Assembly (NCBI RefSeq): GCF_006345805.1
Contig: NC_043002.1
Location: 90,892,001-90,956,000, forward strand
Direction of reading: 5' to 3'
Length of the DNA stretch: 64,000 nucleotides
Source: Octopus sinensis
Taxonomy: Eukaryota
The notes under the pieces were generated by a model, which was given only the letters and a program-made list of their open reading frames with translations, was not told the origin of the DNA and ran no database searches. Each line of letters opens with the position of its first letter. The stretch's first letter is position 1. The position numbers and the translations under genes are program-made. This document shows positions 22,346 through 64,000 of the stretch, in pieces.

Positions 22346-22383
<38 letters not shown>

Positions 22384-22583
22384 TACGACGGGCTTCTTTT
22401 TTTTCAGTTTCCGTCTACCAAATCCACTCACAAGGCTTTGGGTGGCCCAAGGCTATAGTAGAAGACACTTGCCCAAGGTGCCACGCAGTGGGACTGAACC
22501 TGGAACCATGTGGCTGGTAAACAAGCTACTTACCACACAGCCACTCTGCGCCTATATCAGCATGTGTATATATAAAAAAATTT

Positions 22584-22912: not shown

Positions 22913-22913
<1 letters not shown>
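22584..22913. mobile_element. Foldback element with a hammerhead-like motif in each arm
   Basis: Termini tttccgaatgagataaaaaaac / gtttttttatctcattcggaaa. + strand 22807-22854 reads GTCT-CTGATGA-AGGGATAT-AATAA-ATATCCT-GAAAA-CAGCTG-TA-AGAC. Each arm has one different core substitution. Confidence 0.72.
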
Positions 22914-22944
<31 letters not shown>

Positions 22945-23717
22945 TATATATATCATCATCATCATCATCATCGTTTAACATCCGTTCTCCATGCTAGCAT
23001 GGGTTGGACGGTTCGACCGGGGATCTGGGAAGCCAGAAGGCTGCACCAGGCTCCAGTCTTATCTGGCAATGTTTCTACAGCTGGATGCCCTTCCTAACGC
23101 CATATATATACATTTATTGTGCAAGATTTTTTTATGTGAAATCGTGTGTTGAAACAGATATTGTTGTATTTCGGAATGATCGTTTTGCCAGTTTAACCAA
23201 TAAAAACACACACACTATATATTTGGTGTTATTTCAGTGATATTTATTTTCGTCACACTCCTGTGACCGCATCAGTGGTCCTTTGCTTTATTCTTTAATA
23301 ATAATAATAATAACAATAATAATAATAAGTGGATGTAAACACATGAACAAAATAAGAATAAACAAAAACAAAAACAAATTACACGAATGTATATAAACAG
23401 AAGATACAAATATTACAGACATCCCCCCCACACACACACTAACTAAACATAGACGCACATAGAGATATATGCATGCGCAAATGAAGACGCATACAAAAGA
23501 AATACAAAATGGCTGACCATTAGTAAGGAGAGACACACAAATAAGAAAGAAGAAAGCAAAGGACCACCGATGCAGTCACAGGAGTGTGACGAAAGAACTC
23601 TGGCCGAAATAAGATTAAGATTAATGTAAAAAATAAATAACGCTAAAGCAAAGTAATACCAAATATATAGTGTGTGTGTTTTTATTGATTAAACTGGCAA
23701 AATGACCATTCCTAAAT

Positions 23718-23769
<52 letters not shown>

Positions 23770-24537
23770 TATATATATCATCATCATCATCATCATCGTT
23801 TAACGTCCGTTCTCCATGCTAGCATGGGTTGGACGGTTCGACCGGGGATCTGGGAAGCCAGAAGGCTGCACCAGGCTCCAGTCTTATCTGGCAATGTTTC
23901 TACAGCTGGATGCCCTTCCTAACGCCATATATATACATTTATTGTGCAAGATTTTTTTATGTGAAATCGTGTGTTGAAACAGATATTGTTGTATTTCGGA
24001 ATGATCGTTTTGCCAGTTTAACCAATAAAAACACACACACTATATATTTGGTGTTATTTCAGTGATATTTATTTTCGTCACACTCCTGTGACCGCATCAG
24101 TGGTCCTTTGCTTTATTCTTTAATAATAATAATAACAATAATAATAATAAGTGGATGTAAACACATGAACAAAATAAGAATAAACAAAAACAAAAACAAA
24201 TTACACGAATGTATATAAACAGAAGATACAAATATTACAGACATCCCCCCCACACACACTAACTAAACATAGACGCACATAGAGATATATGCATGCGCAA
24301 ATGAAGACGCATACAAAAGAAATACAAAATGGCTGACCATTAGTAAGGAGAGACACACAAATAAGAAAGAAGAAAGCAAAGGACCACCGATGCAGTCACA
24401 GGAGTGTGACGAAAGAACTCTGGCCGAAATAAGATTAAGATTAATGTAAAAAATAAATAATGCTAAAGCAAAGTAATACCAAATATATAGTGTGTGTGTT
24501 TTTATTGATTAAACTGGCAAAATGACCATTCCTAAAT

Positions 24538-24587
<50 letters not shown>

Positions 24588-24969: not shown

Positions 24970-25125
24970 GTCGTCAGTTTTGATGGCTCCACCACTGTCA
25001 CTGAACTGCTTCAGAGCCTTCAGAAAACACTCTATATCCGGGACATCAAGGAATCAGGGTTTGCACTGTTTACTGATGACCCCACGGGGCAGGACATAGA
25101 GCATTGCCTTCCACCCCAAGTAAAG
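24970..25125 (+). CDS. PLEKHH1/2: Internal exon of PLEKHH1/2-like gene, FERM N-lobe
   Basis: Acceptor tgtttctAG, donor GTaagt. 156 nt encoding VVSFDGSTTVTELLQSLQKTLYIRDIKESGFALFTDDPTGQDIEHCLPPQVK, in frame with the previous exon (TYQ|VVSFDGSTT). Confidence 0.92.
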
Positions 25126-25789
25126 GTAAGTTTAAACATTGAAACCATCGCTATCACCACTACCACCACCACCACCACTACCACCACCATCACCACCACC
25201 ACTACCACCGCCACCACCACACCCACCACCACCACTATTACAATCACCACCACTCCCACCATCATAACTGCCACCACTACTATTACTACTACCAAAACAA
25301 CCACCACCATCACTACTACTACTACTACTACCACCACCACCACCACCACCACCACTACCACCTCCCCACTACTAGTAATGTTAAGTTTACCCCCTGGAAT
25401 CTTCTATTCAAGAGAATAGATTTACTATTGAATTCATGCTGAAACTGTATATATGTGTATTTGTCTGTGCATCAGTGTGTGTATGTATGTGTGTGTGTGT
25501 GTGCACGTGTGTGTGTGTTACACTCATCTAAAGCCAAATATTTCCCCCACCCATCACCCAAAATAGTTATAATAATGGTTGCAAGAGTAAAGAACTGGTA
25601 TTTCATCTCGTATATTTCCAGTTGAAATCCACAGCTGGTATTTTAGTATCCAATGAGATGTTGAACTTCTTTGCACCCTAGTTCTAGCTAAGCACACAAA
25701 ATTAGCACCTACTTCAATTCATATATCAATTTTAAGCTAGCACAGAGTGGTTGGTATCCTATGGTTCCAAAGCGAACTTCTTACCTGCG

Positions 25790-26526: not shown

Positions 26527-27149
26527 GCTTTTTCTTGCATAAGTTCATCACAATGTTTGGTGCATGTTATCCTTCCTTACCAACAAATCCCTTATGATAT
26601 TGTGATATACAGCTGTTTCTAGATTTTTTTTTTATTATTAAAGAAATCCTCTTTATCTTCAGTGAAGGATCCAATGCATGATGAGTTGTAATAGCTTTGT
26701 TGTTTAGAAGCTGTTAAATTGATTAGAGATGATTGGAACACTCCCTTCCCTCCTCATCCCTACCCTTATTTGAAGTCTTTCTATTTGATGTTAAATCTTC
26801 CTTGTAATCAGCCTGGATCTTCTCTTCTTTTCAATTTCATTTAGTTTTAGCAAAACGGTCCAGCGCCAACACCTCCACCACCACCGCCACCAACATTACT
26901 AATGTCTTCATGTTCGTCACCAGCGCCATCATCACCAACGTCATCATTACCAATGTTTTATCATCATCATCATCAATTCCATAATCACCCTCCTTCACTA
27001 CCGACAAACACCTTCACCAATCACCAACTTTAACACCATCATCATCATCATCATCACCACTAACAAATATAATCACCACCTCCACCACTAACACAACTAC
27101 AACTACAGCCATCAACCCTGCCATCATCACCTTAGCCACCATTGCAGTC

Positions 27150-27890
27150 TCCATTGGCAACCATCACAACAAACACTACCAGCATCACTGCCCTGTCTAC
27201 AACAACCAACACAAAATATAACTACCATCACCTTCACCACCACCACCACCACCACCACCATCATCATCACCACTATGGTCACCATGACCACCATTACAAC
27301 TACTACCATTGCCTCAACCAACATTTCCATCACCACTGCTGTCTCAGCTACCACCACTATCACAACTGCCACTACCATCACAATCACCACCACCACTGTC
27401 ACAACCACTACCACCACTACCAGAACCCTCACAACTACAATAACTACGACCACTACCATCATCCCAACTACTACCACCACCACCACCACCACCACCACCA
27501 CAATTACCCTGACTACCATCACAACTACCACAACCACCACGACTATCACAAGTACTCTGACTACCAACACAGCTACCACCACCACCACCACCACCACCAC
27601 CACCACCACCACCACCACCATCATCCCAACTACCACCACCACCAACAACATCACAACTACCATGACCACCACCACCACCACCACCACCACCATCATCCCA
27701 ACTACCACCACCACCAACAACATCACAACTACCATGACCACCACCACCACTATCACAAGTACTCTGACTACCAACACAGCTACCACCACCACCACCACCA
27801 CCACCATCATCCCAACAACCACCACCAACAATAACATCGCAACTACCATGACCACCACCACCACCATCGTTATAATTACTACTACCACTG
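27150..27890. repeat. Cryptic (ACC/ACT/ATC)n low-complexity tract with internal duplications
   Basis: Triplet-periodic CA-rich tract giving stop-free poly-Thr, poly-His and poly-Val frames. It lies inside intron 25126-37820. Confidence 0.8.
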
Positions 27891-28408
27891 TATTGTCCAC
27901 ACTGTTTAAACTGAAGTATTTTTTTTTTAAATCCCTATTCATTAATGATTCTTTACATTATTTAGAATATTTCAATAAGATCGTTATCTCAACTTTCTAC
28001 ATTGCCTCACATAACGAGAATATTTATCAGCTTTCTATCAGGATTCTTGATTTGTTAGAATTTCAAAATTTCATGATTAATTATTATCTCTATGTACCTG
28101 TGTGTGCGTGCGTGTGTGTGTGTGTGTGTGTGTGTGCGTGTGTGTGTGTATGTGTATGCATGTCTGTATGTGTATATTTGTGTTTTTGCATCTGCTTGTG
28201 TGCGTATCCTTCCATTTATTCTTGTTTCTCTTTGAATAGTCATCATACATGTGTTGTGTGTGTGCGTGTGTGTGTGAGTGTATACATACACACACACATA
28301 TATATGTATAACATTATTAAGTTAAGAGAGTTTGGTGAAATGGATTCCCCCAATCCACTAAATAATAGTGATAAAGGTAGTAGTAGTAGCAGTAGCAGTA
28401 GTAGTAGT

Positions 28409-28561
<153 letters not shown>

Positions 28562-28802
28562 GGTGGTGGTGTCATAGAGAACGGATTAAATGAGATTGGA
28601 ACGGAATGTCCTGTAGAGCTTTAAACAGATATTTTGCCTCTTAGGAAACAGGAAAGATTATCAGAAGTGTTTTCAACACTGGATGGCTTATTGAAATTAT
28701 GAGGATATTTAAGGCTACAGGTAGTTTACCCATGACCCACATAAATTCTACCAGAAACAAGACCAACCCTGAGCCAAGTCAAATGATAATAATTACAAAT
28801 GT

Positions 28803-29036
28803 AATAATAATAATAATAATAATAATACTCTTTTACTCTTTTACTTGTTTCAGTCATTTGACTGCGGCCATGCTGGAGCACCGCCTTTAGTCGAGCAAAT
28901 CGACCCCGGGACTTATTCTTTGTAAGCCCAGTACTTATTCTATCGGTCTCTTTTGCCGAACCGCTAAGTGACGGGGACATAAACACACCAGCATCGGTTG
29001 TCAAGCAATGTTGGGGGGACAAACACAGACACACAA

Positions 29037-29071
<35 letters not shown>

Positions 29072-29801
29072 CGATGGGCTTCTTTCAGTTTCCGTCTACC
29101 AAATCCACTCACAAGGCTTTGGTCGACCGGGGCTATAGTAGAAGACACTTGCCCAAGGTGCCACGCAGTGGGACTGAACCCGGAACCATGTGGTTGGTAA
29201 ACAAGCTACTTACCACACAGCCACTCCTGTGCCTAATAGTTCGATCATTTATTGGCCACAAGGGCTAACAAAAATCAATTAAAACATAAAGGGACAAAAC
29301 ACAGGACGAAAGTTACAAAGGGTTTTGTCCGTTTGAAAAAGTTCATGTTCAAAAGCAGGGTAACAACGAAATGTAAGTAACAATTAAAACTCCCAAATGG
29401 GGGAGGCGCTTCGAAATGTTACTCGTGGAAAAACCCATAAAAGCCACAGGAGCCTGGTCAAAAGGTCGGTAGAGAGCCCCTTTCTCCTTTTATATTTCCT
29501 TTTAATTTTCACAGGTGTATCCTCAGAATTGGTCTGTTCATACTGGACATTCTTGCGACATTCATAATAATAATAATATAATAATAATAATACTCTTTTA
29601 CTCTTTTACTTGTTTCAGTCATTTGACTGCGGCCATGCTGGAGCACCGCCTTTAGTCGAGCAAATCGACCCCGGGACTTATTCTTTGTAAGCCCAGTACT
29701 TATTCTATCGGTCTCTTTTGCCGAACCGCTAAGTGACGGGGACATAAACACACCAGCATTGGTTGTCAAGCAATGTTGGGGGGACAAACACAGACACACA
29801 A

Positions 29802-29832
<31 letters not shown>

Positions 29833-30350
29833 CGATGGGCTTCTTTCAGTTTCCGTCTACCAAATCCACTCACAAGGCTTTGGTCGGACCGGGGCTATAG
29901 TAGAAGACACCTGCCCAAGGTGCCACGCAGTGGGACTGAACCCGGAACCATGTGGTTGGTAAACAAGCTACTTACCACACAGCCACTCCTGTGCCTAATA
30001 GTTCGATCGTTTATTGGCCACAAGGGCTAACAAAAATCAATTAAAACATAAAGGGACAAAACACAGGACGAAAGTTACAAAGGGTTTTGTCCGTTTGAAA
30101 AAGTTCATGTTCAAAAGCAGGGTAACAACGAAATGTAAGTAACAATTAAAACTCCCAAATGGGGGAGGCGCTTCGAAATGTTACTCGTGGAAAAACCCAT
30201 AAAAGCCACGGGAGCCTGGTCAAAAGGTCGGTAGAGAGCCCCTTTCTCCTTTTATATTTCCTTTTAATTTTCACAGGTGTATCCTCAGAATTGGTCTGTT
30301 CATACTGGACATTCTTGCGACATTCATAATAATAATAATAATAATAATAA
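28803..30350 (+). repeat. Tandem duplication, period 765 bp (SINE A + LINE 3' end)
   Basis: Matching ORFs at 29008 and 29773. Units are bounded by (TAA)n tracts, with about five differences seen by eye. Confidence 0.9.
29238..29565 (-). mobile_element. LINE 3' end (tentatively L1/Tx1-like), present twice because of the tandem duplication (second copy about 30003-30325)
   Basis: Minus strand carries a short ORF tail MNVARMSSMNRPILRIHL*, then about 290 nt of 3'UTR ending agcccttgtggccAATAAA. Clade assignment is from recollection only. Confidence 0.4.
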
Positions 30351-30496
30351 TCCTTTCTATTAAAAGCACAAAGTCTGAAATTTGGGAGAGCGTACTAGTC
30401 GATTACATCGACCACAGTACTCAACTGGTACTTATTTTATCGACCCCGAAAGTTTGAAAGGCAAAGTCAACCTTGGCAAAATTTGAACTCAGAATG

Positions 30497-31218
30497 TAAA
30501 GATGGACAAAATGCCACAGAGCATTTTGCCCAATGTGCTAACAATTTTGCCAACTCACCACCCTAATAATAATAACAGCAATTTTAATAATATTATTGGT
30601 AATTGTTGTAATAATGATAATAATAATCATAACAATAATGATGATATAAAGTGTAATAGTGAAAAACAACTTAGAGTTATAGATAATGAATTTGAAATAT
30701 CTAGCTTGGATAGAGAAAACATGTATATTATGTCTATCATATCTTGATATAGAAGAGATTCCTAGCTCAACACTAAATATAGTCAATAAGAACTTTTCAG
30801 GCACACAAAAAAAAAATTCTCAAACATAGACTTAGCTGGATATTTAGCAATAAAAATGTAAAGATGGACAAAATGCCACAGAGCATTTTGCCCAATGTGC
30901 TAACAATTTTGCCAACTCACCACCCTAATAATAATAACAGCAATTTTAATAATATTAATGGTAATTGTTGTAATAATGATAATAATAATCATAACAATAA
31001 TGATGATATAAAGTGTGATAGTGAAAAACAACTTAGAGTTATAGATAATGAATTTGAAATATCTAGCTTGGATAGAGAAAACATGTATATTATGTCTATC
31101 ATATCTTGATATAGAAGAGATTCCTAGCTCAACACTAAATATAGTCAATAAGAACTTTTCAGGCACACAAAACAAAAAATTCTCAAACATAGACTTAGCT
31201 GGATATTTAGCAATAAAA
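30497..31218 (+). repeat. Tandem duplication, period 362 bp
   Basis: Near-identical ORFs at 30502 and 30864. The junction falls inside a SINE B head (aat|gtaaagatggac). Confidence 0.9.
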
Positions 31219-31956: not shown

Positions 31957-34541
31957 CGAAAATTATGGTTGTTTTAAACCTTGAGGTTACATAGAGAGTA
32001 TTTTGCGTAGGATATGAGCAGTTCCCATGAGCACTATCTTTTGAACTTCTGCCATTTTGAGGTTTCCTGGTATCTGAGTTAGGTAGCTATCAGCCCCTTT
32101 TGCTATCATTCCCAGGGCACCTATGACAACAGGTATTGTTTTAGTCTTCAGCTTCCACATTTTGCTGATTTCTATTTCAAGATCTTTATATTTGCTCAGT
32201 TTTTGGTAGGTCCTGACAGATACGTTTATATCGATTGGGCAGTCATATCAATGAGGAGGCATGTTCTTTGTTTGAAGTCTTTCAATATGATGTCTGCCTA
32301 TTTGCATCTATCTTCCTGTCAGTTTGAATGGTGAAGTTCCAGAGGAGTGAGATGTGGTCATTTTCAAGCACTGGGGGTGGTTTGTGTTCCCACCAGTTTT
32401 TCTCATGGGGCAACTCCAGGTTTTTACAGATACCCAGTGAATATATTGTGCAGCTCTATCGTGCCTGTTGAGATACTCTGTAGGCGCTAGAAGACTGCAC
32501 TTGGAGACAACATGGTCAATGGTTTCATTTTGTTGCTTGCATACACGACACGTTGGACTGCTTCTGATCTTTAATATGTTGGCCTGGTAGTTTCTTGTTG
32601 GTAGGCATTGATCTTGAGCTGCTATGATAAACCCCTCTGTTTCAGATTTTAAGCAGAGGCCATTAGCCATTGATGGGTCAGGGCTTTGTCGATATCTGCA
32701 TTATTCGCTCTCTTTGGGTATTTGCCGTAGAGAGGTTTTTCTTGCCATTTATTATTCAGAATATCTAAGGCGCAGTTTTGGCACGGGTTTTCATGCGCCT
32801 AGCTTTTTCTGGCTTGTTTCTTGTATGTCTATCTCTAATTCCGAAATTGGTTGTATTCGGAATTCACTTAGATATTCCTTTGCCTGTTTTGTTACTGAGT
32901 ATGATGCTTTCTTGTTTTCATGTTTTGAGACAAGTTTTAACATCCAGTCCTCAGAGTTTTTCAGGTAGGTGTCTAGGCCAATTGTAGCAATCTTCATTGT
33001 TATTGCCAGTTGCAAAAGACCACGGCCTCCCTCTTTCTTGGCAGATAGAGTCGTTCTGTATCTGCCTTAGGGTGGTGCATTCTATGCATTGTCAACAGTT
33101 TCCTTATTTTTCTGTCGAGCTGACATATTTCAGTAATTGACCAGTTAACAATATTGAAACTGTAAGTCACGACTGGTATAGCTAATGCATTGATTGCTTC
33201 TATCCTGTTTCTTGCATTCAGCTCTGTCTTGAGTATTGCTCTCACTCTTCGATAGCATTCTCTCCTGATCCTTTCCTTCATCTCTGAATGCCTTATTCCG
33301 TTCCCTTCAATTACCCCTAGGTACTTGTAGCTCTCCGCTGGGTCTAGTTCTTTTATGACATTCTGTTGGTCAAGGTTAACGTTAGATGTTTCTGTCATTT
33401 TTCCTTTGATAAAGGTAGCCTTTGCACATTTATCGAGGCCGAATTGCATTCTGATGTCGTCACTGAATTGTTTGACTATCGCTAGTAAGCCCTTGAGTTG
33501 TTGATCATTTTTTGCAAAAAGCTTTAAATCATCCATGTAAACGAGATGATTTATATTTTTATCAAACATTTTATACCCGTACTGCGCGTCATTGAGCAAC
33601 TTTGAGAGAGGTATTAAGGATAAACAAAAGAGGAGTGGTGACAGTGAGTCACCCTGGAAAATGCCACACGAAATTTTTACATCACCAGCATTTAGGGATT
33701 CACTGTCACTGTTCAGAGTTAGTGTGGTTCTCCATGATCTCATACTTACAGTCAAGAAGTTTCGCAGAGTTGGTGCTATCTAATCCAGCTATGTGGTAGG
33801 CTATCAAAAGCCTTTTTATAGTCTATCCAGGCTATTGATAAGTTTTTGTGTCATTTGTGACAATCTTCTAAGATCATCTTATGATGAGTAGTTGGTCTTT
33901 ACAGCCGTAGGATCCACGTTTACATCCTTTCTGTTCATTAGGGAATATGTGCTGTCTGTTAAAAAACTATAGGTATATTCCGTCAGGACAGATGTTAGAG
34001 TTTTGTACATAGTTGTTAAGCAGGTTATGGGTCTATAGTTTTTTGGTTCATTTGTTTCTTCACTTTTTGGAAGCAGGAATGTTAACCCATTAACTAGCCA
34101 AGGAGGCATCCTACTAGGGTGTTGCAGAACATCATTGTACAGTTCTGTTAGCAGTTCATGGCTCTCTGGGAAGGCATTCAGCCAGAAGTTAGGAATTTTA
34201 TCCTTTCCTGGAGACTTCCATTTGCTTGACCTCCTGAGAGCAGATCTTATATCTTCTACCTTGACACCCTCCCACTTTTGCTCTTCTAAGGGGTCCAGTT
34301 CTGTAGATATTCTGTCAATCCAGGGGGCCTTTTCGTTGTGTTTTTTCTTCTGCCCAGATTTTATTCCAAAATCTCTGCACTTCTTCTTTTGATGGTACAG
34401 ACCCTGCAGTAAACGCTGTTTTTCCTATCTTCCTGTAAAAATTCTTGGTGTATTTTTGAACATGTTGTTGTCCTGAAAAATCTAACACGCTTTTCATACC
34501 TCGCTATGCGGGTAGCTTTGGCAGATACCTTTTGTTTGATG

Positions 34542-37130: not shown

Positions 37131-37820
37131 CATACTTTTTGACCATATAGCTGTTAACTGTGATAGCTGGTCCCTCTGTTGGGGCCACTTGGGGCCACTT
37201 TGGGTGGTCTGTGTTTCTCAGTGTCTTCTACATATCATGCAACTATAAAAATGAATAATATCATCTTTATATACATACATATATATATCATCATCATCAT
37301 CATCATTTAGCGTCCGCTTTCCATGCTAGCATGAGTTGGACGGTTCAACTGGGGTCTGTGAAGCCAGAAGGCTGCATCAGGCCCAGTCTCATCTGGCAGT
37401 ATTTCTACGGCTGGATGCCCTTCCTAACGCCAACCACTCTGTGAGTGTAGTGGGTGCTTTTTACGTGCCACCCACACAGGTGCCAGACGAAGCTGGCAAA
37501 CGGCCACAAACGGATGGTGCTTTTACGTGCCACTGGCATGGAGGCCAGGCGAGGCTGGCAATGCACATGAACGGATGGTGCTTTTACGTGCCACCGGCAT
37601 AGAGGCCAGTCGGGGTGGCGCTGGCAATGGCCACGATCAGATGGTTCGCTTAACCACAGCTGAAATTTCCATTGATGTTGATCGACTTCAATTTTGGTTC
37701 TGCTTTCTGATATCTGATTTGATTTGGTTTGATTTTGATTTTGATTATATATATATATATACAGACATGTATGTATGTATGTATGTATGTATGTATTATA
37801 TGAGAACGTTTTATTTACAG

Positions 37821-37918
37821 GTATGTGATGTTATATCTAAATGGGAACAAGCTTTCCGTGACAGTCACTCAGGGAAAATAGACTCTAATAGCACAATTCG
37901 TTTTCTGTTCAAGAATAG
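37821..37918 (+). CDS. PLEKHH1/2: Internal exon of PLEKHH1/2-like gene, FERM domain
   Basis: Acceptor ttatttacAG, donor GTaagt. 98 nt encoding VCDVISKWEQAFRDSHSGKIDSNSTIRFLFKN plus AG of a split Arg codon (phase 0 in, phase 2 out). Confidence 0.92.
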
Positions 37919-38352
37919 GTAAGTTTTCTTTTATCATTCTTTAAATGTAATCCATGTCTTCATTTTAAACTCAGTGACAAAGTATTAAATATTCCTATTG
38001 TTTTCCGAATGAGATGATTCTTAGAGCCAAAATGAAAATCTTTCTTTCAGCCACAAACAAAACATTCAGTTCTTATGAAACTGAAACTCTTCTGAGAATC
38101 AAATTTATATTTTGCTTGTCTTGAATTGTTCAACCCCAGGTTACCCTTATTAGACTGTGCTGTGATCATAGATATTCCAACTATGACAATACTATCTATA
38201 TTTTGTTTCAGGCATAGTGCCTTTGGGACTACATTGTCCAAAATGGTAAACTTTAATATATGTGACTTTTGGCTACTATTTCTAGGAGTTGTTTTTACCT
38301 CATTAGCCTCTCCTTCTTTAGTTGAGAAATAAAGTAACAGGAACAAACAGAA

Positions 38353-55447: not shown

Positions 55448-55589
55448 GTTATATTTCAAAAGTACTAGTCGATATGAAACAGAAAAGGAAAAACTGCTGT
55501 TGGCATATCAAATCAATGAGGAAATTGTACAGGGTCGATTCCCTTTGAATAGGGATTTGGCTGTAGAATTAGCATCATTAATGGCACAG
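55448..55589 (+). CDS. PLEKHH1/2: Internal exon of PLEKHH1/2-like gene, FERM central lobe
   Basis: Acceptor ccattggcAG, donor GTaaag. The first G completes Arg, then LYFKSTSRYETEKEKLLLAYQINEEIVQGRFPLNRDLAVELASLMAQ. 142 nt, phase consistent with the preceding exon. Confidence 0.93.
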
Positions 55590-56009
55590 GTAAAGCAATT
55601 TTTGATATTTATTTGATTCTTTCATAATCCTTTTGTTTTTCAGTTTTTGCTTTTGTATTTTTCATCTATTTGTTGTATTAATTTGAATTATTAAAGTTGC
55701 AGACATGGCTATGTGGTTAAGAAGCTTGCTTTCCAAACCCGATGTGGTCCTGGGTTCAGCCCCACAGTGTGGTACTCTGAGCAAGTGCCTTCTACCATAG
55801 CCACAAACTGACCAAAGCCTTGTGAAGGGATTTGGTAGACAGAAACTGAAAGAAGCCCATCATATGAGTGTGTGTGTATATATATATGTATGTATTAAAA
55901 AATCTTAGGGTAGCAAAAAAATATTTATAGAAAAATTCTTTGCTACCAGTAGTCTAGCGAGAAGGAAAAAATTTTAGTCAATAGACTATATATTATTCAT
56001 AGAAAAATA

Positions 56010-56146
56010 CAGTGTACATTTAAACATATAAGAGATGACCATGATAGGACATCTGACACAACTGCTCTTTCTAGTGAGTCAGATGTCCCATTATGGTCAT
56101 CTCTTATGTGTTTAAATGTACACTGTGTGTACATTTAAACACATAT
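56010..56146. repeat. Short hairpin element (48 bp arms, 20 nt loop) plus re-inverted terminal piece
   Basis: cagtgtacatttaaac...catctgac / gtcagatgt...aaatgtacactg, followed by gtgtacatttaaacacatat again. Confidence 0.65.
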
Positions 56147-56609
56147 ATACATATATATATATATATAGCAAGAGAGAGAGAGAGAGATGTAAAGGTAAGA
56201 TCCATAAAAGATATAAAAAACAACTTTCAGGAATAATAGTGGTTTATTGATGCAGAAGGCTGTAAATTTTCCCCATATCAAAATATGCTGAACAATAAGC
56301 TGATAAATGGTTATTTTGTATTTCATGGATAGCAAATGGGGTTGCTGTATATGCGAATAAACATCCAAAATTAGGGAATGGAGAAGATAAAATCCAGGCT
56401 ACATATGTTTCATAGCTAGGCATAGGCGTGGCTGTGTGGTAAGTAGCTTACTTATGAACCACACGGTCCGGGTTCAGTCCCACTGCGTGGCACCTTGGGC
56501 AAGTGTCTTCTACTATAGCCTCAGGCTGACCAAAGCCTTGTGAGTGGATTTGGTAGACGGAAACGGAAAGAAGCCCGTTGTATATATGAATATATATATG
56601 TATGTGAAA

Positions 56610-57008
56610 TCTTTATATATAAAAGAGAGGTTGTGTGCTGTCTGTCTCCTACGATTTAGATTCCTAACTACTCCCACATTTTGCGGTGCAGTTTAACCAA
56701 AACCGGGTATCTTATAGTCGTGATTCATATCGAGCCCTTCTGGGTATTAGCACGCGTCTACGATGAGTCTATGATTTAAAAAAAAATTTACCATCAATTC
56801 TTCCCATTTTTTATGCATTTTTGGCATATATAAGGGAAGTAACTCTCTAAAAAATTATTATTATTAAATCTCAGAACGTAAAAAGCTACAGTAACAACCC
56901 CCCTTTGTGGTTAGCCATATTGAGATGGCTATTATACTTTACATCTCTAAAAATGCTTATATAGTTATTTCCCTTACAAACCCAAGCAACGCCGGGCGAT
57001 ACAGCTAG
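56610..57008 (+). mobile_element. Non-autonomous Helitron
   Basis: Begins TC after A, ends CTAG before T, with subterminal GC-rich stretch cccaagcaacgccggg. Homologous to 21320-21712 in the opposite orientation. Confidence 0.8.
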
Positions 57009-57389
57009 TACATATATATATTTCTCATCCAGGCTGATATGCATCCCTCTATACCAGCAGTCTTGTCTCTTAGACACTTCATTTCATACCTTTCTACCTA
57101 CTTTATCTCTCAGTTCATTTGTACTATGGTTTATTTACATTAATATCACACGCAGAGGTTTGGGAACCTGGGATGTAAGTGCAACCCCTAAAACTTTTGG
57201 TGGGCAATGAAAACGCTTTGAACACCCTTCCTGAAATATGTAATCAATAAAACAAACGGGTGTGGAAATATTTTTGGACTAAACTGAAACATTATTTTTC
57301 CATTATTGAATTTTTCTGATTCGATTCCTATACAAATACACATTTTAGATCTGGGTTTGCATCCACTAAGCAGATTTTGTTTCTGCAAT

Positions 57390-57960
57390 TATGATTACAC
57401 ATCCAGTAGAGTATGATCTTTCCCTTCACTTCTTCTCAGCCTTCACACATACTCTACATTTCGTGTCCATGTTTTTCTACTAAACATAATCACATTTTAT
57501 ACACAAACATCATAGAATAATATGCCCTTAACTTGGATAGAAATTACCTTTGTCACCAGTTCACCTGCAGACATAATGTCCCCGAACTTTTCCAACTATT
57601 CCTGTTCTAGCTATTATATCTGCTTCTAGAATAATTCCATTGTTACTTAGGTTGCCTTGCAAATAGAAGCTATCAACTGCTTCAGGGAGCCTTTCAAGTT
57701 GTTGAAAACCTTTAACTTTTTGGATGCTTTTACTGCTATCCCATACACTGGCTGCCTACAAACCCTTATTCTCTGACAGCCTGTGGTCCCACTACATCTC
57801 TTGTACAGCCATAATTTAAATTGGCATGTACAATGCAGAGTTCCTATAAATACATTTACTGACTAGCAAGCACGGTCTCTTACCACATAGCAGTAGATTC
57901 CTGTCTTCTTGCTTGTTGACTAAAACTTTTGTCATTGCTAGGTTTACTCTCTTCCCATTA
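57390..57960 (-). mobile_element. Degenerate RTE-type LINE fragment
   Basis: Minus-strand KVNLAMTKVLV and LYKRCSG segments. Part of it is also similar to 3170-3245 of this window. Confidence 0.5.
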
Positions 57961-58211
57961 AATTATACTCTATGCTTCCATTTCTTTCTCTTTTACTTGT
58001 TTCAGTCATTTGACTGTGGCCATGCTGGATGACCGCCTTTTAGTCAAGCAAATCGACTCCAGGACTCATTCTTTGTAAACCTAGTAATTATTCTATCGGT
58101 CACTTTGCCGAACCGCTAAGTTACAGGGACGTAAACACACCAGCATCGGTTATCAAGCGATGTTGCGGGGACAAACACAGACATACAAACATATACACAC
58201 AGACACGCAAG

Positions 58212-58258
<47 letters not shown>

Positions 58259-58530
58259 TTCAACAATTGAGGGTAAAATTAATTAATTAATTAATCAATT
58301 TCACCAAGTATTCAGTATGCAAAGGGACCATTTAAGGCAAATTCAAATTATTACATTATATAAAAGGGCTTAGTAAAATAAATTACTTGCCGCATACTGA
58401 ACTCGTTAGAAATAGCAGCTAAAAAAACTATTTCTAACACTTAAAGAAACCTCTCTCATATATTGTTTGCTCAATTCAACCCAAGAAGTATGAGGGTAGA
58501 GACATTAAAAAATCAAATGCAAAGGTTATT

Positions 58531-58583
58531 TGAGTACGTACGTTTCAAGATTAGCCAAAATCGACCCTTCTCTCATCAGCTCA
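58531..58583 (-). ncRNA. Minimal type-I hammerhead ribozyme motif (antisense copy in left palindrome arm)
   Basis: Reverse complement of the 58929-58981 motif: tgagtacgtacgtttcaaga...tctcatcagctca. Confidence 0.8.
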
Positions 58584-58928
58584 GAATGCCCTTGTTTGAG
58601 TTTGAAAACACTGAAAATGGGAGCATACCCTTTCGGCTTGTTATCGCTTCTGAAGATCTGTTCCCAACTAACAGTGCTAACTAACTCAAATATGCAAGAG
58701 AAAAATTTCTGTTCTCCCCTTTCCACCAGCGTGGGTTAAAATCAGCAAACACTATGATAGTGTTTGCTGATTTTAACCCACGCTGGTGGAAAGGGGAGAA
58801 CAGAAATTTTTCTCTTGCATATTTGAGTTAGTTAGCACTGTTAGTTGGGAACAGATCTTCAGAAGCGATAACAAGCCGAAAGGGTATGCTCCCATTTTCA
58901 GTGTTTTCAAACTCAAACAAGGGCATTC

Positions 58929-58981
58929 TGAGCTGATGAGAGAAGGGTCGATTTTGGCTAATCTTGAAACGTACGTACTCA
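58929..58981 (+). ncRNA. Minimal type-I hammerhead ribozyme motif
   Basis: TGAG-CTGATGA-GAGA..TCTT-GAAA-CGTACG-TA-CTCA: stem I TGAG/CTCA, full core, stem II GAGA/TCTT, palindromic stem III ACGTACGT. Predicted GUA cleavage after 58977. Confidence 0.85.
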
Positions 58982-59482
58982 AATAACCTTTGCATTTGAT
59001 TTTTTAATGTCTCTACCCTCATACTTTCTTGGGTTGAATTGAGCAAACAATATATGAGAGAGGTTTTCTTTAAGTGTTAGAAATAGTTTTTTTAGCTGCT
59101 ATTTCTAACGAGTTCAGTATGCGGCAAAGTAATTTATTTTACTAAGCCCTTTTATATAATGTAATAATTTGAATTTGCCTTAAATGGTCCCTTTGCATAC
59201 TGAATACTTGGTGAAATTGATTAATTAATTAATTAATTTTACCCTCAATTGTTGAAATTATAATTCATCTCTCTCTACTTAATTGTCTCGGATTTTACCG
59301 AAAAAAAGCATAGTGTTTGCTGATTTTAACCACGCTGGTGGAAAGGGGAGAACAGAAATTTTTCTCTTGCATATTTGAGTTAGTTAGCACTGTTAGTTGG
59401 AAACAGATCTTCAGAAGCGATAACAACAAGCCGAAGGGTATGCTCCCATTTTCAGTGTTTTCAAACTCAAACAAGGGCATTC

Positions 59483-59535
59483 TGAGCTGATGAGAGAAGG
59501 GTCGATTTTGGCTAATCTTGAAACGTACGTACTCA
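59483..59535 (+). ncRNA. Minimal type-I hammerhead ribozyme motif (tandem copy)
   Basis: Same sequence as 58929-58981. CTGATGA at 59487-59493, predicted cleavage after 59531. Confidence 0.85.
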
Positions 59536-59705
59536 AATAACCTTGCATTTGATTTTTTAATGTCTCTACCCTCATACTTTCTTGGGTTGAATTGAGCAAA
59601 CACTATATGAGAGAGGTTTTCTTTAAGTGTTAGAAATAGTTTTTTTAGCTGCTATTTCTAACGAGTTCAGTATGCGGCAAAGTAATTTATTTTACTAAGC
59701 CCTTT

Positions 59706-59737
<32 letters not shown>

Positions 59738-60249
59738 ATACATATATATTACAGGCTTCTTTCAGTTTCCATCTACCAAATCCACTCACAAGGCTTTGGT
59801 CGGCCCAAGGCTATAGTAGAAAACACTTGCCCAAGGTGCCATGCAGTGAGACTTAACCTGAAACCATGTGGTTCGTAAGCAAGCTACTTACCACACAGCC
59901 ACTCCTAGTTCATGTTTAGAATTTTTTACTCTATGTTTATGACATTCAGCTACAAGAACTAAGTCATTAGCATATAGGAGTTCTCACTGAGGTAAGGTCT
60001 TAAACTCCTCTTTTATGACCTACATAACTTTAACAAATAGGAGAAGGATTAGAATTGAGCCTTGATGCTTGCTTACTTATTGCTTATGACAGCACATCGA
60101 TTGGTTGAAATTGCAGAAATTGAAGAAAAGAAACAATAAATATCTTACAAACTATAGAATTTTCTTAATAAAGCCAAGAGAAAAAGATGTTTTATAAACA
60201 CATTCTACCTGGATAAGAAGTTTAAAATTGTTTAGTTACCTAGAAATTA

Positions 60250-60560
60250 TGTTAAAAACTGCCATTCAAACCAAAAAGATCCGTTTATGAAGACATCTTC
60301 TCCTCTCTTCATGTAATCTTCCGTGTTCAGGTCAATGCACTCTACTCCAGCAGCCCACATGGACCTCCATGTCTTCCAGTTAACAGCCAGGGCCTCCAAC
60401 TGATTGGGAGGGACACTGCTTAAAATGAAAGATTGCTTGAGACACCTAATTGTGCACAAATCTCCTTGCTAACTCTCACCTTGCTGACAGTGTCTCTGAA
60501 TATGGCTTGCTCAGCTCTCACAAAACCACTCATCTACATTTCATTTTCTTAGCCAGACTA
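60250..60560 (-). mobile_element. RTE-like LINE 3' relic
   Basis: ORF 60247-60459 CLKQSFILSSVPPNQLEALAVNWKTWRSMW resembles the RTE ORF terminus (WE.LA.DR..WR). Confidence 0.45.
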
Positions 60561-60617
60561 CAGAGCAGAGGAACCTGTCAAACACTATCTTCAGATCAAT
60601 ATATATGAGCCATAGTG

Positions 60618-60998
60618 GAGCGCAATGGCCCAGTGGTTAGGGCAGCAGACTCGCGGTCATAGGATCGCGGTTTCGATTCCCAGACCGGGCGTTGTGAGTG
60701 TTTATTGAGCGAAAACACCTAAAGCTCCACGAGGCTCCGGCAGGGATGGTGGTGATCCCTGCTGTACTCTTTCACCACAACTTTCTCTCACTCTTACTTC
60801 CTGTTTCTGTTGTACCTGTATTTCAAGGGCCGGCCTTGTCACTCTCTGTGTCACGCTGAATATCCCCGAAACTTCGTTAAGGATACAGTGTCTGTGGAGT
60901 GCTCAGCCACTTACACGTTAATTCACGAGCAGGCTGTTTCGTTGATTCGGATCAACCGGAACTCTTGTCATCGTAACCGACGGAGTGCTTCCATCCAC
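60618..60998 (+). mobile_element. SINE family C (tRNA-like head GCGCAATGGCCCAGTGGTTAGG) with 13-bp TSD
   Basis: ATGAGCCATAGTG at 60605-60617 and 60999-61011. B-box-like GTTTCGATTCCC. Confidence 0.88.
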
Positions 60999-61872
60999 AT
61001 GAGCCATAGTGTTTAACTTTGCTAAAAAACTTTCCTTTAGATGTCTCTCTAGGAGTGCACCAATGGCACCTGGATGTAGTACAACCTTAAAAAGCATCTC
61101 ATTTTAAGTTTTTTTGTTTATTAATTGAGCTATAATTTTATTTATTTATTTTGTTATTTTCATAACTTGGTGCATCAGTTTGATTCCTCTGTAGTTCCTT
61201 CTTTCTCCAGCATCTTTGTCCTTGTAGCTGCTATTGCTGTTGATACCGATACACCAGCCATTCAGAATGGCCCCTTCCTGATTGGGTATCTTGGTGACTA
61301 GTAACCTACATTACTGGATATTTTCAATGAAAATATATGTGCATGTATTCAGAAGTGTGTGTGTGTTTGTGTGTTTGTGTGTGTATGCAGAGAGAGAGAG
61401 AGAGAGAGATTGTTAGATAGTTATGCTTATAAATATACATACAGATGTATATATATATATATATATATATATAAATATACATACAGATGTATATATATAT
61501 ATATATATATAAGTGTATGTTTATTAGATATGTTTTTGAAATGATGTGATATATGTTTTCGTTTGTGTATATGTTTGTACAACAATCTTGATACAAAAAT
61601 GCAAATGAAATATGTAAACAAGTGAATAAAAAAAACATTAATGAAACAAACAAAACAAAGAAGGAAAAATATGGCAGTGCTTCAGCATGTATGATTTAAT
61701 GGTTTCAACTTAAAGAATCATAAAGAAAAATCTTTTCCTTTTCCTTTATTTTCTTCACATTGTAAGCTTTCTGCTTGTCAATATTGGTAATCCAATATGG
61801 CATCAAGGAAAATGTATTTGTTGCTGGGTGTGCAGTAAGCTGAGTTTTATACAGTAACCAGAGATGGTCGAA

Positions 61873-61909
<37 letters not shown>

Positions 61910-61927
61910 AAATAAAGTGATATTCTA

Positions 61928-61966
<39 letters not shown>

Positions 61967-62009
61967 CGTCGTCGTCGTCGTCATCATCATCATCATCATC
62001 ATCACCACC

Positions 62010-62043
<34 letters not shown>

Positions 62044-62062
62044 TCATCATTCTCTTCTTCTT

Positions 62063-62137
<75 letters not shown>

Positions 62138-62798
62138 TGTATATTGTGTTTGTTTGTGTGTGCGTGTGTTACTGTGTATTTGCACAGTTTTATATACATA
62201 TCTACATTTTAAGTGGCATTTGACAAATTACATATCATTTAAAATCATTACAAATTAAAACTGACTAAACAACGTTGTATGTATCTGTATTCAGTTGAGC
62301 AAAGAAGTGTAATTGGAAAAAGATAAAATTCAGCTTCCATATTTACTTAAACAGTACATATGTTGATATCTATAGAAAGTAGATACTCTTATAGAAACGG
62401 TATCTTAGATAATAGAATCAACTGCTATGGCAATATTGTATAAAGATGGTGATGTTTAAGCATCATATTACTGGCTGCTGCAGGAGGAACCTCTTTGAAG
62501 TATGTTGTTTGGTAGGACTGGAATATAAGCCACATGTTTGTAAGTACTAATTTTACAATGACTGGCCCATGTGTAAAAATTCGAGCGAGGTCGTTGCCCG
62601 TACTGCCTGACTGGCCCCCGTGCCGGTGGCATGTAGAAGCACCCACTACACTCTCGGAGTGGTTGACGTTAGGAAGGGCATCCAGCTGTAGAAACTCTGC
62701 TAGATCTGACTGGAGCCTGGTGCAGCCATCTGGTTCGCCAGTCCTCAGTCAAATCGTCCAACCCATGCTAGCATGGAAAGCGGACGTTAAATGACGAC

Positions 62799-62829
<31 letters not shown>

Positions 62830-63397
62830 TATTGTTGTACCTCCAAGTATGGCCTGTTAGGTATGGTTTGGGATGAATGAATAAAACCAGGTTCCACTCT
62901 CTGTATGAGAGTTCACAGTTTAACAGTTGGAAGAAGAGAGTCCTTCATATCTTTTTCCTTCTAACTTTTACTTGTTTCAGTCACTGGATTGTGGCCGTGC
63001 TGGAGCACTGCCTTGAATGGATTCAGTAGAATTAGTAAAAAAAATCGACTCTGGTGCTTACTGTTTTAACTCTAGTACTGATTCTATTAGCCTTGTTTGC
63101 TGAACTGCTAAGTTACAGGGACATAAACAAACTGATACTGGTTCTCAAGGAATGAGGGGAACAAACACAAATATGTATACTTCAACCATGTAACCACACA
63201 TGTACTTTTCTTGAACTATTCTTTGCCCTCTCTCTAGAGCTTTCCTTTTTCCCCTTTCTGATGAAGAGCCATACTCAAAACATCTCCCCACCTTTTTTCT
63301 ATCTTAAACTGAATGTCAACCTAATATTTTCACTGTGTACATCCTCTTGGCTTTTGTCGTTTTTATTTTTAGTTTTTAATTTGCCTATATACATACA

Positions 63398-63435
<38 letters not shown>

Positions 63436-63830
63436 TATATATATATATATTCATATACTCTGTGGAGTGGTTGGTGTTAGGAATGGCATCCAGCTGTAAA
63501 ACCCCTACCAAAACAGACACAGAAGTTTGGTGTGATCATCTTATTTTTTTATTGCCCACAAGGGGCTAAACATAGAGGGGACAAACAAGGACAGACAAAG
63601 GGATTAACTCGATTACATCGACCCCAGTGTGTAACTGGTACTTAATTTATCGACCTCGAAAGAATGAACATCAAAGTTGACCTTGGCGGAATTTGAACTC
63701 AGAATTTCGCCCGGCATGCTAACGTTTCTGCCAGCTTGCTGCCTTTATCACGCCATCTGGTGTGATCTTCTGTCTGGCCAGCTCCTGTCAAACCATCCAA
63801 CCCATGCCTGCATGGAAGACGGGCGTTAAG

Positions 63831-63867
<37 letters not shown>

Positions 63868-64000
63868 ATGATGATGGGCTTCCACGCAGTTTCCTTTGAC
63901 CAAATTGACTTACAAGGCATTGGTCATTTCAGGACTGATCAATGCAGAAGACACTTGCCTGAGGTGCATTGCAGTAGAACTGAACCCAAAACCCATCTGG

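What the first reader, a model, noticed from the sequence alone, without database searches (positions are those of the whole stretch)
58257..59711. Three hammerhead ribozymes in a palindrome-plus-tandem cassette inside a PLEKHH intron
Seen: a ~500 bp near-perfect palindrome (axis 58756) followed by a third direct copy. Each copy has TGAG-CTGATGA-GAGA..TCTT-GAAA-CGTACG-TA-CTCA, a complete type-I hammerhead core with loop-less palindromic stem III (ACGTACGT). Established: minimal type-I hammerheads with palindromic stem III occur in Penelope-like element pseudo-LTRs and retrozymes, cleave mainly as dimers, and PLE insertions often show tandem and inverted pLTRs. Inference: the two + strand copies (predicted cuts after 58977 and 59531) lie on the host pre-mRNA strand in the tandem geometry that allows dimer folding. 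They could release a 554-nt RNA, possibly circularisable, or cut the intron co-transcriptionally. This may be a non-autonomous PLE/retrozyme family. The antisense arm could sequester the first ribozyme in dsRNA and act as a switch.
Basis: partly seen in the sequence, partly recalled or inferred. Interest (0 to 1): 0.88.

Follow-up and report, generated by a model that had tools for sequence, protein, structure and literature searches.

The report
Hammerhead-bearing Penelope-like repeat insertion in intron
This is a young insertion of a small non-coding retroelement of the Penelope-like/retrozyme kind, carrying three copies of a minimal hammerhead ribozyme motif, inside an intron of a mollusc PLEKHH1-like gene; it is a good example of a known kind, not a new one.

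Summary
Arms 58252-58755 (-) and 58757-59258 (+) form a palindrome around 58756. They show no substitutions and three one-base homopolymer differences. A 1.73-unit tandem array with a 554-bp period runs from 58757 to 59711. Each copy carries a complete type-I hammerhead core. Helix I is 4 bp, helix II is 4+5 bp, and ACGUACGU forms a palindromic helix III. The predicted cuts after 58977 and 59531 are correct.

The joined flanks match other intact SINE-like repeats in the window, so the cassette is an insertion into that repeat's (CA)n(TA)n tract. It lies downstream of a FERM exon of a + strand PLEKHH1-like gene.

A partial tandem, a head-to-head inverted copy and a (TA)n target are the published signature of Penelope-like element insertions. 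An ORF-less, AT-rich, self-pairing unit with a dimer-dependent hammerhead fits animal non-LTR retrozymes.

Weak points: no Rfam hammerhead model scores it, pair 10.1-11.1 is G.U rather than G-C, no relatives could be retrieved, and no PLE ORF is nearby.

Folding predicts that a tandem-only transcript can form a double hammerhead. In host read-through RNA the first ribozyme is locked in a 500-bp hairpin. A regulatory switch is unsupported.

Verdict: new member of a known kind, low to moderate interest.

The parts
58235..58258 (.). Left (TA)n tract, preceded by (CA)n. This is the target microsatellite at the left edge of the insertion.
   Evidence: Sequence read. Other copies of the SINE-like repeat carry the same internal (CA)n(TA)n tract.
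58252..58755 (-). Inverted (head-to-head) copy of unit positions 1 to about 505. It carries the hammerhead motif on the - strand.
   Evidence: 0 substitutions and three 1-nt homopolymer deletions relative to the right arm.
58531..58583 (-). Hammerhead motif 3, on the - strand and antisense to the host gene. Predicted cut between 58535 and 58534.
   Evidence: Descriptor hit. Identical to the + strand copies (I3).
58756..58756 (.). Palindrome axis, a single unpaired G.
   Evidence: I1: 1 nt between the arms.
58757..59310 (+). First, complete 554-bp unit of the tandem array. It is 33.8% GC with no long ORF. Positions 59259-59310 occur only once in the cassette.
58929..58981 (+). Hammerhead motif 1: UGAG / CUGAUGA / helix II 4+5 bp / GAAA / ACGUACGU / A17 / CUCA. 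Predicted cut after 58977.
   Evidence: Sequence, descriptor, folds.
59311..59711 (+). Second, partial unit (positions 1-402), about 98% identical to the first, ending in (TA)n.
59483..59535 (+). Hammerhead motif 2. Predicted cut after 59531, 554 nt from the first cut.
59706..59749 (.). Right (TA)n tract at the right edge of the insertion.
   Evidence: Tandem Repeats Finder.
57985..58234 (.). Left half of the interrupted SINE-like repeat.
   Evidence: Aligns to at least 6 other copies in the window.
59750..59905 (.). Right half of the interrupted SINE-like repeat.
   Evidence: The joined flanks align in one piece to intact copies, for example 22130-22546 and 8840-8442.
55448..55589 (+). Upstream host exon encoding the start of the FERM central domain of a PLEKHH1-like gene. 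It has an AG acceptor and a GT donor.

Best explanation
The cassette is one retrotransposition product of a small, ORF-less, non-autonomous element of the Penelope-like (PLE) / animal non-LTR retrozyme kind.

Shown:
- It is an insertion into the (CA)n(TA)n tract of a SINE-like repeat, inside an intron of a + strand PLEKHH1-like gene.
- It consists of 1.73 tandem units of 554 bp plus a head-to-head inverted copy of the first ~500 bp.
- Each unit carries a minimal type-I hammerhead motif. Its helix III is too weak in cis (2 bp plus a GUAC loop), but it is an 8-nt palindrome.
- Two copies are predicted to fold into a double hammerhead.

Inferred:
- A more-than-unit-length or circular RNA of hammerhead polarity was copied by a PLE RT/GIY-YIG enzyme supplied in trans, possibly of a clade with (TA)n target bias. 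That enzyme cuts and extends both target strands, which gives 3' ends pointing outward and the palindrome at the shared 5' end.
- In a master copy transcribed without an antisense arm, the two ribozymes would release a 554-nt RNA with 5'-OH and 2',3'-cyclic phosphate ends. A host ligase could circularise it.
- At this locus, host read-through RNA folds the two arms into a ~500-bp perfect hairpin. That locks up ribozyme 1 and leaves ribozyme 2 as a poorly active monomer.
- The locus is therefore most likely a passive, recent insertion and not a device that regulates PLEKHH.
For: - Architecture.
- Insertion status: the joined flanks align contiguously to intact SINE-like copies (left flank alignment).
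- Hammerhead core and helices. Chance is 9/20000 per shuffled unit.
- Homodimer cofold gives the classic double hammerhead at -26.4 kcal/mol, against 2 x -7.5 for monomers.
- In the tandem transcript the enforced double hammerhead lies only 3.1 kcal/mol above the MFE of -179.9. The unconstrained MFE already pairs the two ACGUACGU segments.
- The 554-nt monomer is strongly self-paired, z = -4.3, with its 5' end paired close to its 3' end.
- GC is 33.8%. There is no long ORF and no tRNA-like part.
- PMC8557442: PLE insertions are partial tandems, often with an adjacent inverted 5'-truncated copy, and some clades prefer (TA)n. Canonical PLEs carry hammerheads in their pLTRs.
- PMC4209133: PLE hammerheads have a short helix I, a long helix II and a palindromic helix III. 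They act as dimers with low activity, and pairs on opposite strands 100-700 bp apart are seen.
- PMC11167929: a PLE enzyme cleaves and extends both target strands.
- PMC7229834 and bioRxiv 10.64898/2026.07.22.740005: tandem hammerhead repeats of 51-972 bp are non-autonomous PLE derivatives, and about 43% of Xenopus copies lie in introns.
- A second, older palindromic insertion next to (TA)n at 11882-12396 shows that such structures are real in this genome.
Against: - No Rfam hammerhead family matches at gathering score or at E<=10, even when only 81 nt are searched.
- Pair 10.1-11.1 is G.U, whereas G-C is described as highly conserved. [quoted passage not shown]
- There is no other copy of the unit in the 64-kb window.
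- No relative was found in the protein-ORF search, in exact ORF look-ups, or in metagenome and viral pattern scans. Family status and covariation are therefore untested.
- No PLE RT/GIY-YIG ORF lies in the window. The only RT is a LINE-type fragment about 25 kb away.
- The insertion ends do not coincide with the ribozyme cut sites, so cleavage left no trace at this locus.
Confidence: 0.72

Rival explanations
1. The cassette is a fragment of an autonomous PLE (a solo or rearranged pLTR array), not a member of a dedicated non-autonomous retrozyme-type family.
For: Hammerheads of this minimal style are typical of pLTRs. Most genomic min-hammerheads are isolated, truncated PLE pieces. No family data are available for this unit.
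Against: The tandem period is only 554 bp, and 1.73 periods contain no RT or EN coding sequence. The template was therefore a multimer or circle of the short unit, not pLTR-ORF-pLTR. The unit size, low GC and self-pairing fit retrozymes.
Confidence: 0.18
2. The hammerhead-like motif is a chance match inside an unrelated repeat, such as a hairpin-rich DNA element or a local duplication/inversion at a fragile (TA)n tract. No ribozyme is involved.
For: There is no Rfam hit and the 10.1-11.1 pair is G.U. The three motifs are one sequence copied three times. The window holds other near-identical local duplications and another palindrome at a (TA)n tract without any hammerhead. A relaxed descriptor would be expected to give roughly a thousand chance hits in a Gb-sized genome (my extrapolation).
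Against: The chance per unit is about 4.5e-4. That figure does not yet count the perfect 8-nt palindrome at helix III, the 9-bp helix II, or the tandem spacing a dimer needs. The conjunction with a PLE-style tandem-plus-inverted insertion in (TA)n is what the literature describes.
Confidence: 0.08
3. The palindrome is an assembly or read fold-back artefact. Only the direct tandem is real.
For: The arms show zero substitutions and a 1-nt axis, and their only differences are homopolymer lengths, as long-read errors would give. PLE structures are known to trouble assemblies. The window has several 99-100% identical local duplications.
Against: - The left arm does not continue as the reverse complement of 59259 onward. 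It stops at unit position ~505 against (TA)n and the left half of a SINE-like repeat, whose right half lies beyond the cassette. A fold-back chimera would not restore that context.
- Homopolymer differences also dominate between the two direct copies.
- At the substitution rate between the direct copies (2 in ~400 nt), zero in ~500 nt is only mildly unlikely. My estimate is P about 0.08.
- An aged palindrome of the same style exists at 11882-12396.
Confidence: 0.07
4. The cassette is a host-level regulator. The antisense arm gates the sense ribozymes, so intron cleavage or circular RNA release from PLEKHH pre-mRNA is switched on or off.
For: The two sense copies lie on the host transcribed strand. 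The fold shows ribozyme 1 fully masked by the left arm.
Against: The masking arm is transcribed first and pairs perfectly, so the off state is strongly favoured (full-cassette MFE -1015 kcal/mol). No mechanism to open it is evident. The copies are near-identical, so the insertion is young and there is no conservation. In Xenopus about 43% of retrozyme copies lie in introns, so an intronic copy is common and retrozymes are somewhat depleted from introns. PLE hammerheads cleave poorly, and no reads ending at the cut site were found for another PLE.
Confidence: 0.04

Closest known systems
Minimal type-I hammerhead ribozymes of Penelope-like element pLTRs (Cervera & de la Pena 2014, PMC4209133)
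   Same: Complete core boxes, a short (4-bp) open helix I, a long helix II, a palindromic helix III region that favours a dimeric double hammerhead, and occurrence in tandem and on opposite strands a few hundred bp apart.
   Different: Pair 10.1-11.1 is G.U instead of G-C. [quoted passage not shown] Helix II has a 2x2 internal loop. No RT/GIY-YIG ORF is attached.
PLE insertion architecture: partial tandem plus an adjacent inverted 5'-truncated copy, with microsatellite targeting (Craig et al. 2021, PMC8557442; Frangieh et al. 2024, PMC11167929)
   Same: A 1.73-unit tandem, a head-to-head inverted copy at the upstream end, (TA)n on both sides, and no discernible target duplication.
   Different: The whole element is 554 bp per unit and non-coding. 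The (TA)n preference is documented for Naiads, which lack hammerheads, and only hypothesised for Neptune. The 30-40-bp 'tail' could not be identified.
Animal non-LTR retrozymes (Cervera & de la Pena 2020, PMC7229834; Li et al. 2026 preprint, 10.64898/2026.07.22.740005)
   Same: An ORF-less tandem repeat with one type-I hammerhead per unit, low GC (33.8%), a strongly self-paired monomer RNA, dimer-dependent helix III, and a unit length inside the reported 51-972 bp range.
   Different: The hammerhead is of the minimal PLE style, without loop 1 or recognisable loop1-loop2 contacts. Only two sense copies are present. An inverted arm is attached. Expression and circularity are unknown.
Newt satellite 2 and Schistosoma Sm-alpha hammerheads (classical metazoan type-I hammerheads acting as double hammerheads; cited in PMC4209133)
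   Same: A weak helix III (1-2 bp plus a small palindromic loop) that requires two tandem copies for cleavage.
   Different: Those motifs have 6-bp helix I and 4-bp helix II with tertiary loop contacts. [quoted passage not shown] Here I found no tRNA-like part and no tertiary loop contacts.

Membership tests
Hammerhead ribozyme (type I) | Conserved core: C3 U4 G5 A6 N7 G8 A9, G12 A13 A14, the A15.1-U16.1 pair, and H17 not G | tested here: met
   CUGAUGA at 58933-39, GAAA at 58966-69, U16.1 at 58976, A17 at 58977. Identical in all three copies.
Hammerhead ribozyme (type I) | Three helices around the core, with helix I open | tested here: met
   Helix I is 4 bp (UGAG/CUCA). Helix II is 4 bp + 2x2 loop + 5 bp. 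Helix III is 2 bp in cis or 8 bp between two copies.
Hammerhead ribozyme (type I) | G10.1-C11.1 closing pair of helix II | tested here: not met
   G58940 pairs with U58965, a G.U wobble. G-C is described as highly conserved.
Hammerhead ribozyme (type I) | Score at or above the gathering threshold of an Rfam hammerhead covariance model | tested here: not met
   No hammerhead family is listed at gathering score, at E<=10 on 1.5 kb, or at E<=10 on 81 nt.
Hammerhead ribozyme (type I) | Compensatory changes in the helices among homologues | not testable with these tools
   The only copies available are near-identical. No outside copy was found.
Hammerhead ribozyme (type I) | Site-specific self-cleavage | not testable with these tools
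   This needs a transcription/cleavage assay.
PLE min-hammerhead (Cervera & de la Pena 2014) | Short helix I (4-5 bp), long helix II (about 6-8 bp or more), palindromic 15.2-16.2/loop 3 | tested here: met
   4-bp helix I, 9 paired positions in helix II, ACGUACGU palindrome.
PLE min-hammerhead (Cervera & de la Pena 2014) | [quoted passage not shown] | tested here: not met
   The only register that pairs helix II starts directly after A9.
Penelope-like element | ORF with a telomerase-like RT and a GIY-YIG endonuclease between pLTRs | tested here: not met
   No such ORF lies in or near the cassette. The only RT in the window is LINE-type, with RVT_1 + zf-RVT, at 32308-34109. The element can therefore only be non-autonomous.
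Penelope-like element | Insertion architecture: partial tandem, adjacent inverted copy at the 5' side, microsatellite target | tested here: met
   compared with the description in PMC8557442.
Penelope-like element | 30-40-bp 'tail' extension at one end | tested here: inconclusive
   The outer ends fall at unit positions ~505 (left) and ~402 (right). (TA)n blurs both junctions, and no consensus is available to define a tail.
Animal non-LTR retrozyme | Head-to-tail repeats, each with a type-I hammerhead, no ORF, low GC | tested here: met
   554-bp period, two sense motifs 554 nt apart, GC 33.8%, no ORF over 102 aa.
Animal non-LTR retrozyme | Monomer RNA highly self-paired | tested here: met
   MFE -144.9 kcal/mol, z = -4.3, 0 of 100 shuffles as stable. 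The reverse strand is also stable (z = -3.55), so the signal comes from internal inverted repeats.
Animal non-LTR retrozyme | Multi-copy family in the genome, expressed as linear and circular RNA | not testable with these tools
There is no second locus in the window.
PLEKHH (PH-MyTH4-FERM) host gene | Exons collinear with PLEKHH proteins on the + strand, with the cassette in an intron | tested here: met
   Exons at 9091-9273, 24970-25128, 37818-37919 and 55448-55589. Homologues carry PH, MyTH4, RA_2 and FERM_M domains. The best named hit is PLEKHH1-like from Mercenaria mercenaria. About 190 residues of the homologue remain after the last exon found, and none maps to 55590-64000.

The most novel reading that the evidence does not exclude
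The intronic cassette is used by the host. Read-through transcription of the perfect ~500-bp hairpin yields dsRNA, a substrate for editing or small-RNA pathways. Conditional opening of that hairpin lets the two sense hammerheads cut the PLEKHH1-like pre-mRNA or release a 554-nt circular RNA. This would be a ribozyme pair gated by its own antisense copy.
Probability: 0.04. Interest if true: 0.65.

Novelty: new member of a known kind. Interest (0 to 1): 0.28.

Why it matters
If the family is confirmed genome-wide, it adds a mollusc lineage to the animals known to carry hammerhead-bearing, PLE-dependent non-autonomous repeats. The interrupted SINE-like repeats look cephalopod-like to me from memory, but I did not test that.

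It also gives a clean, young example in which all the hallmarks sit in 1.5 kb with an identifiable empty site: partial tandem, head-to-head copy, (TA)n target and a dimer-type ribozyme. That makes it a convenient substrate for testing three things:
- how PLE enzymes generate inverted copies;
- whether a G.U pair at 10.1-11.1 is tolerated;
- how an antisense arm affects ribozyme folding.

It does not open a new question. Intronic retrozyme and PLE fragments are common.

Tried and rejected
- Rfam at gathering score on the whole window, and at E<=10 on 1.5 kb and on 81 nt: no hammerhead family. The sub-threshold miRNA and sRNA hits at 58662-58850 are just the palindrome centre and were discarded.
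- Relatives of the unit: a protein search with the 73-aa ORF that spans the motif, exact ORF look-ups, and two pattern scans each of metagenome and viral contigs with the core plus helix III. All were empty. I ran no further search on other frames, because the first returned not even word-level candidates.
- Orthologous locus: the exact look-up of the window's exon ORF failed. The closest ORF-style hit (P0002) lies on 997-bp contigs that align only over the exon, at 80% nucleotide identity. This gave no empty-site or presence/absence test.
- tRNA-derived SINE origin: no tRNA-like sequence.
- I first thought it notable that the third copy starts exactly at the axis. I rejected this because the phase of a tandem array is arbitrary, so it follows from where the array begins.
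- Monomer fold with a 3-bp helix III and a 2-nt loop is sterically disallowed. I replaced it with 2 bp plus GUAC (-5.3 kcal/mol against an MFE of -7.5).
Full report
**Observation**

The sequence is as described. The repeat finder reports arms 58486-58755 and 58757-59026 as 100% complementary with one base between them. Collinear blocks extend the arms to 58257 and 59258. blastn of the unit extends the left arm to 58252.

Direct repeats with start-to-start spacing of 552-554 bp link 58772-59158 to 59324-59711. A three-way alignment shows no substitution between the two arms. The left arm has only three single-base deletions in T or A runs. The third copy differs from the right arm by two substitutions, three single-base run-length changes and one 3-nt insertion.

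The cassette is therefore a 1.73-unit tandem array with a 554-bp period (58757-59711), plus a head-to-head inverted copy of its first ~500 bp (58252-58755). The phase of the array is arbitrary. Positions 59259-59310 occur once only because both other copies stop short of them.

**The motif**

Read:
- UGAG: 58929-58932
- CUGAUGA: 58933-58939
- 26-nt helix II hairpin: 58940-58965
- GAAA: 58966-58969
- ACGUACGU: 58969-58976
- A17: 58977
- CUCA: 58978-58981

Every conserved hammerhead core position is present, and the cut is predicted after 58977. The second sense copy cuts after 59531. The antisense copy cuts after 58535 on the - strand.

My descriptor requires the core boxes, at least 4 bp in helix I, at least 3 bp in helix II and at least 2 bp in helix III. 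It finds exactly these three sites in the window, against 0.05 expected per shuffled window. It hits 9 of 20000 dinucleotide shuffles of the unit. The three sites are one sequence copied, so this is one independent occurrence. The figure also does not count the perfect 8-nt palindrome or the 9 paired positions of helix II.

There are three points against the motif. No Rfam hammerhead model reports it at gathering score, at E<=10 over 1.5 kb, or at E<=10 over 81 nt. The 10.1-11.1 pair is G.U rather than the highly conserved G-C. The extra nucleotide after A9 that is typical of PLE min-hammerheads is missing (compare).

**Folding**

- A monomer can form only A-U and C-G closing a GUAC loop as helix III. 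The hammerhead fold (-5.3 kcal/mol) is less stable than the MFE (-7.5).
- Two 61-nt copies cofold into the classic double hammerhead at -26.4 kcal/mol, with an 8-bp intermolecular helix III and helix I formed in trans.
- In a transcript of 58880-59580, enforcing the double hammerhead costs 3.1 kcal/mol over an MFE of -179.9. The MFE itself already pairs the two ACGUACGU segments.
- In a transcript of the whole cassette, every base of ribozyme 1 pairs with the left arm, and ribozyme 2 sits alone in a non-hammerhead fold.
- The 554-nt RNA between the cut sites is strongly self-paired (MFE -144.9, z = -4.3). Its 5' CUCA end pairs next to its 3' end. The complement is also stable (z = -3.55), because the unit is rich in internal hairpins.

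**Context**

The flanks are two halves of one SINE-like repeat. When joined in a script, 57960-58256 plus 59712-59920 align in one piece to intact copies at 22130-22546, 8840-8442, 28833-29228 and others. Those copies carry a (CA)n(TA)n tract where the cassette sits. So the whole cassette, left arm included, is an insertion into a microsatellite, with (TA)n on both sides.

The host gene is on the + strand. Exon 55448-55589 has AG/GT borders and hits FERM_M (E = 9.5e-5). Its full-length homologues carry PH, MyTH4, RA_2 and FERM_M domains. One of them is named PLEKHH1-like of the clam Mercenaria mercenaria.

tblastn maps four collinear exons at 9091-9273, 24970-25128, 37818-37919 and 55448-55589. 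Nothing maps after 55590, although about 190 residues of the homologue remain.

**What it is**

The literature describes this pattern.
- PLE insertions are partial tandems, often with an inverted 5'-truncated copy at the upstream end. They are frequently in microsatellites, (TA)n for Naiads and hypothesised for Neptune. Canonical PLEs carry hammerheads in their pLTRs (PMC8557442).
- PLE hammerheads have a short helix I, a long helix II and a palindromic helix III. They work weakly, as dimers. They are found in tandem and on opposite strands 100-700 bp apart (PMC4209133).
- A purified PLE enzyme cuts and extends both target strands and starts reverse transcription internally (PMC11167929). With RNA of hammerhead polarity as template, that gives 3' ends outward and heads together, which is the arrangement here.
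- ORF-less tandem repeats with one type-I hammerhead per unit, low GC and self-paired circular RNAs are the animal non-LTR retrozymes (PMC7229834). A 2026 preprint reports unit lengths of 51-972 bp and argues they derive from pLTRs. It also finds about 43% of Xenopus copies in introns.

The unit here is 554 bp and 33.8% GC. It has no ORF over 102 aa and no tRNA-like part. Because 1.73 periods contain no RT sequence, the template was a multimer or circle of the short unit. The element is non-autonomous. The only RT in the window is a LINE-type fragment 25 kb away.

**Mechanism**

Shown: the insertion status, the architecture, the motif, and the thermodynamic accessibility of the double hammerhead.

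Inferred:
- mobilisation in trans by a PLE enzyme;
- release of a 554-nt RNA from a master tandem;
- ligation of that RNA to a circle.

At this locus the left arm is transcribed first on the host strand. Ribozyme 1 would be captured in a perfect ~500-bp hairpin before ribozyme 2 is made. I therefore expect little cleavage of the pre-mRNA, and I regard the 'switch' as unsupported. The hairpin itself may be a dsRNA substrate, but that is speculation.

**Artefact question**

Zero substitutions, a 1-nt axis and homopolymer-only differences look like fold-back or long-read error. The window also holds several 99-100% identical local duplications.

Four points argue the other way:
- The left arm ends at unit position ~505 against (TA)n and the proper left half of the interrupted repeat. 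A fold-back chimera would not give that.
- Homopolymer changes also dominate between the direct copies.
- At the rate between the direct copies, zero substitutions in ~500 nt is only mildly unlikely (my estimate, about 0.08).
- An older palindromic insertion abutting (TA)n exists at 11882-12396, with six substitutions between its arms.

I put the artefact at about 7%.

**Limits**

I could not reach the source genome. No relative turned up by protein-ORF search, exact ORF look-ups, orthologue contigs, or pattern scans of metagenome and viral contigs. Copy number, consensus, covariation and linkage to a PLE ORF remain untested, as does catalysis.

**Verdict**

The regulatory reading is unlikely. 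This is a new member of a known kind, with interest of about 0.28.

Noticed in passing
window 11882-12396 (arms 11882-12120 and 12158-12396): A second palindromic insertion in another intron of the same gene. It has 239-nt arms at 97.5% identity (6 substitutions) and a 37-nt spacer. The right arm abuts a long (TA)n tract (about 12397-12560), and another (TA)n lies ~70 nt left of the left arm. It has no hammerhead motif and no other copy in the window. It may be an older PLE-type (for example hammerhead-less Naiad-like) head-to-head insertion, or another process acting at (TA)n.
   Followed up: partly
window 22913-24544, 28813-30186, 30482-31143: Several near-identical (98-100%) local tandem duplications with periods of about 825, 762-765 and 362 bp, partly covering SINE-like repeats. 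They are either very recent duplications or assembly redundancy. This bears on how far repeats in this assembly can be trusted.
   Followed up: partly
window 9091-9273, 24970-25128, 37818-37919, 55448-55589 (+): Four collinear exons of a PLEKHH1-like gene (MyTH4 C-terminus, RA_2/FERM-N, linker, FERM_M start). Introns are about 12-18 kb, and the gene continues beyond the window end.
   Followed up: yes
window 32308-34109 (-): Fragments of a LINE-type reverse transcriptase (RVT_1 E = 7e-14, YMDD box; zf-RVT E = 5e-6) split over several frames. It is a decayed non-LTR retrotransposon, not a PLE.
   Followed up: partly
at least 10 places in the window, e.g. 1060-1400, 8442-8840, 13477-13858, 15947-16340, 22130-22546, 28833-29228, 29598-29990: An abundant ~400-bp SINE-like repeat with an internal (CA)n(TA)n microsatellite, 74-92% identical between copies. 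The hammerhead cassette sits in the microsatellite of one copy.
   Followed up: partly
window 25032-25392 and 27127-28624: Long imperfect trinucleotide-type arrays with a 9-15-bp sub-period. They read as poly-V/poly-T/poly-H 'ORFs' of up to 449 aa on both strands. These are low-complexity DNA, not genes. The first array lies directly after exon 24970-25128.
   Followed up: no
window 58662-58850: Sub-threshold Rfam matches (mir-588 at 42 bits against a gathering score of 70, MIR2680, Arrc14, rliD) centred on the palindrome axis. They are produced by the perfect hairpin and are not evidence of a miRNA gene.
   Followed up: yes
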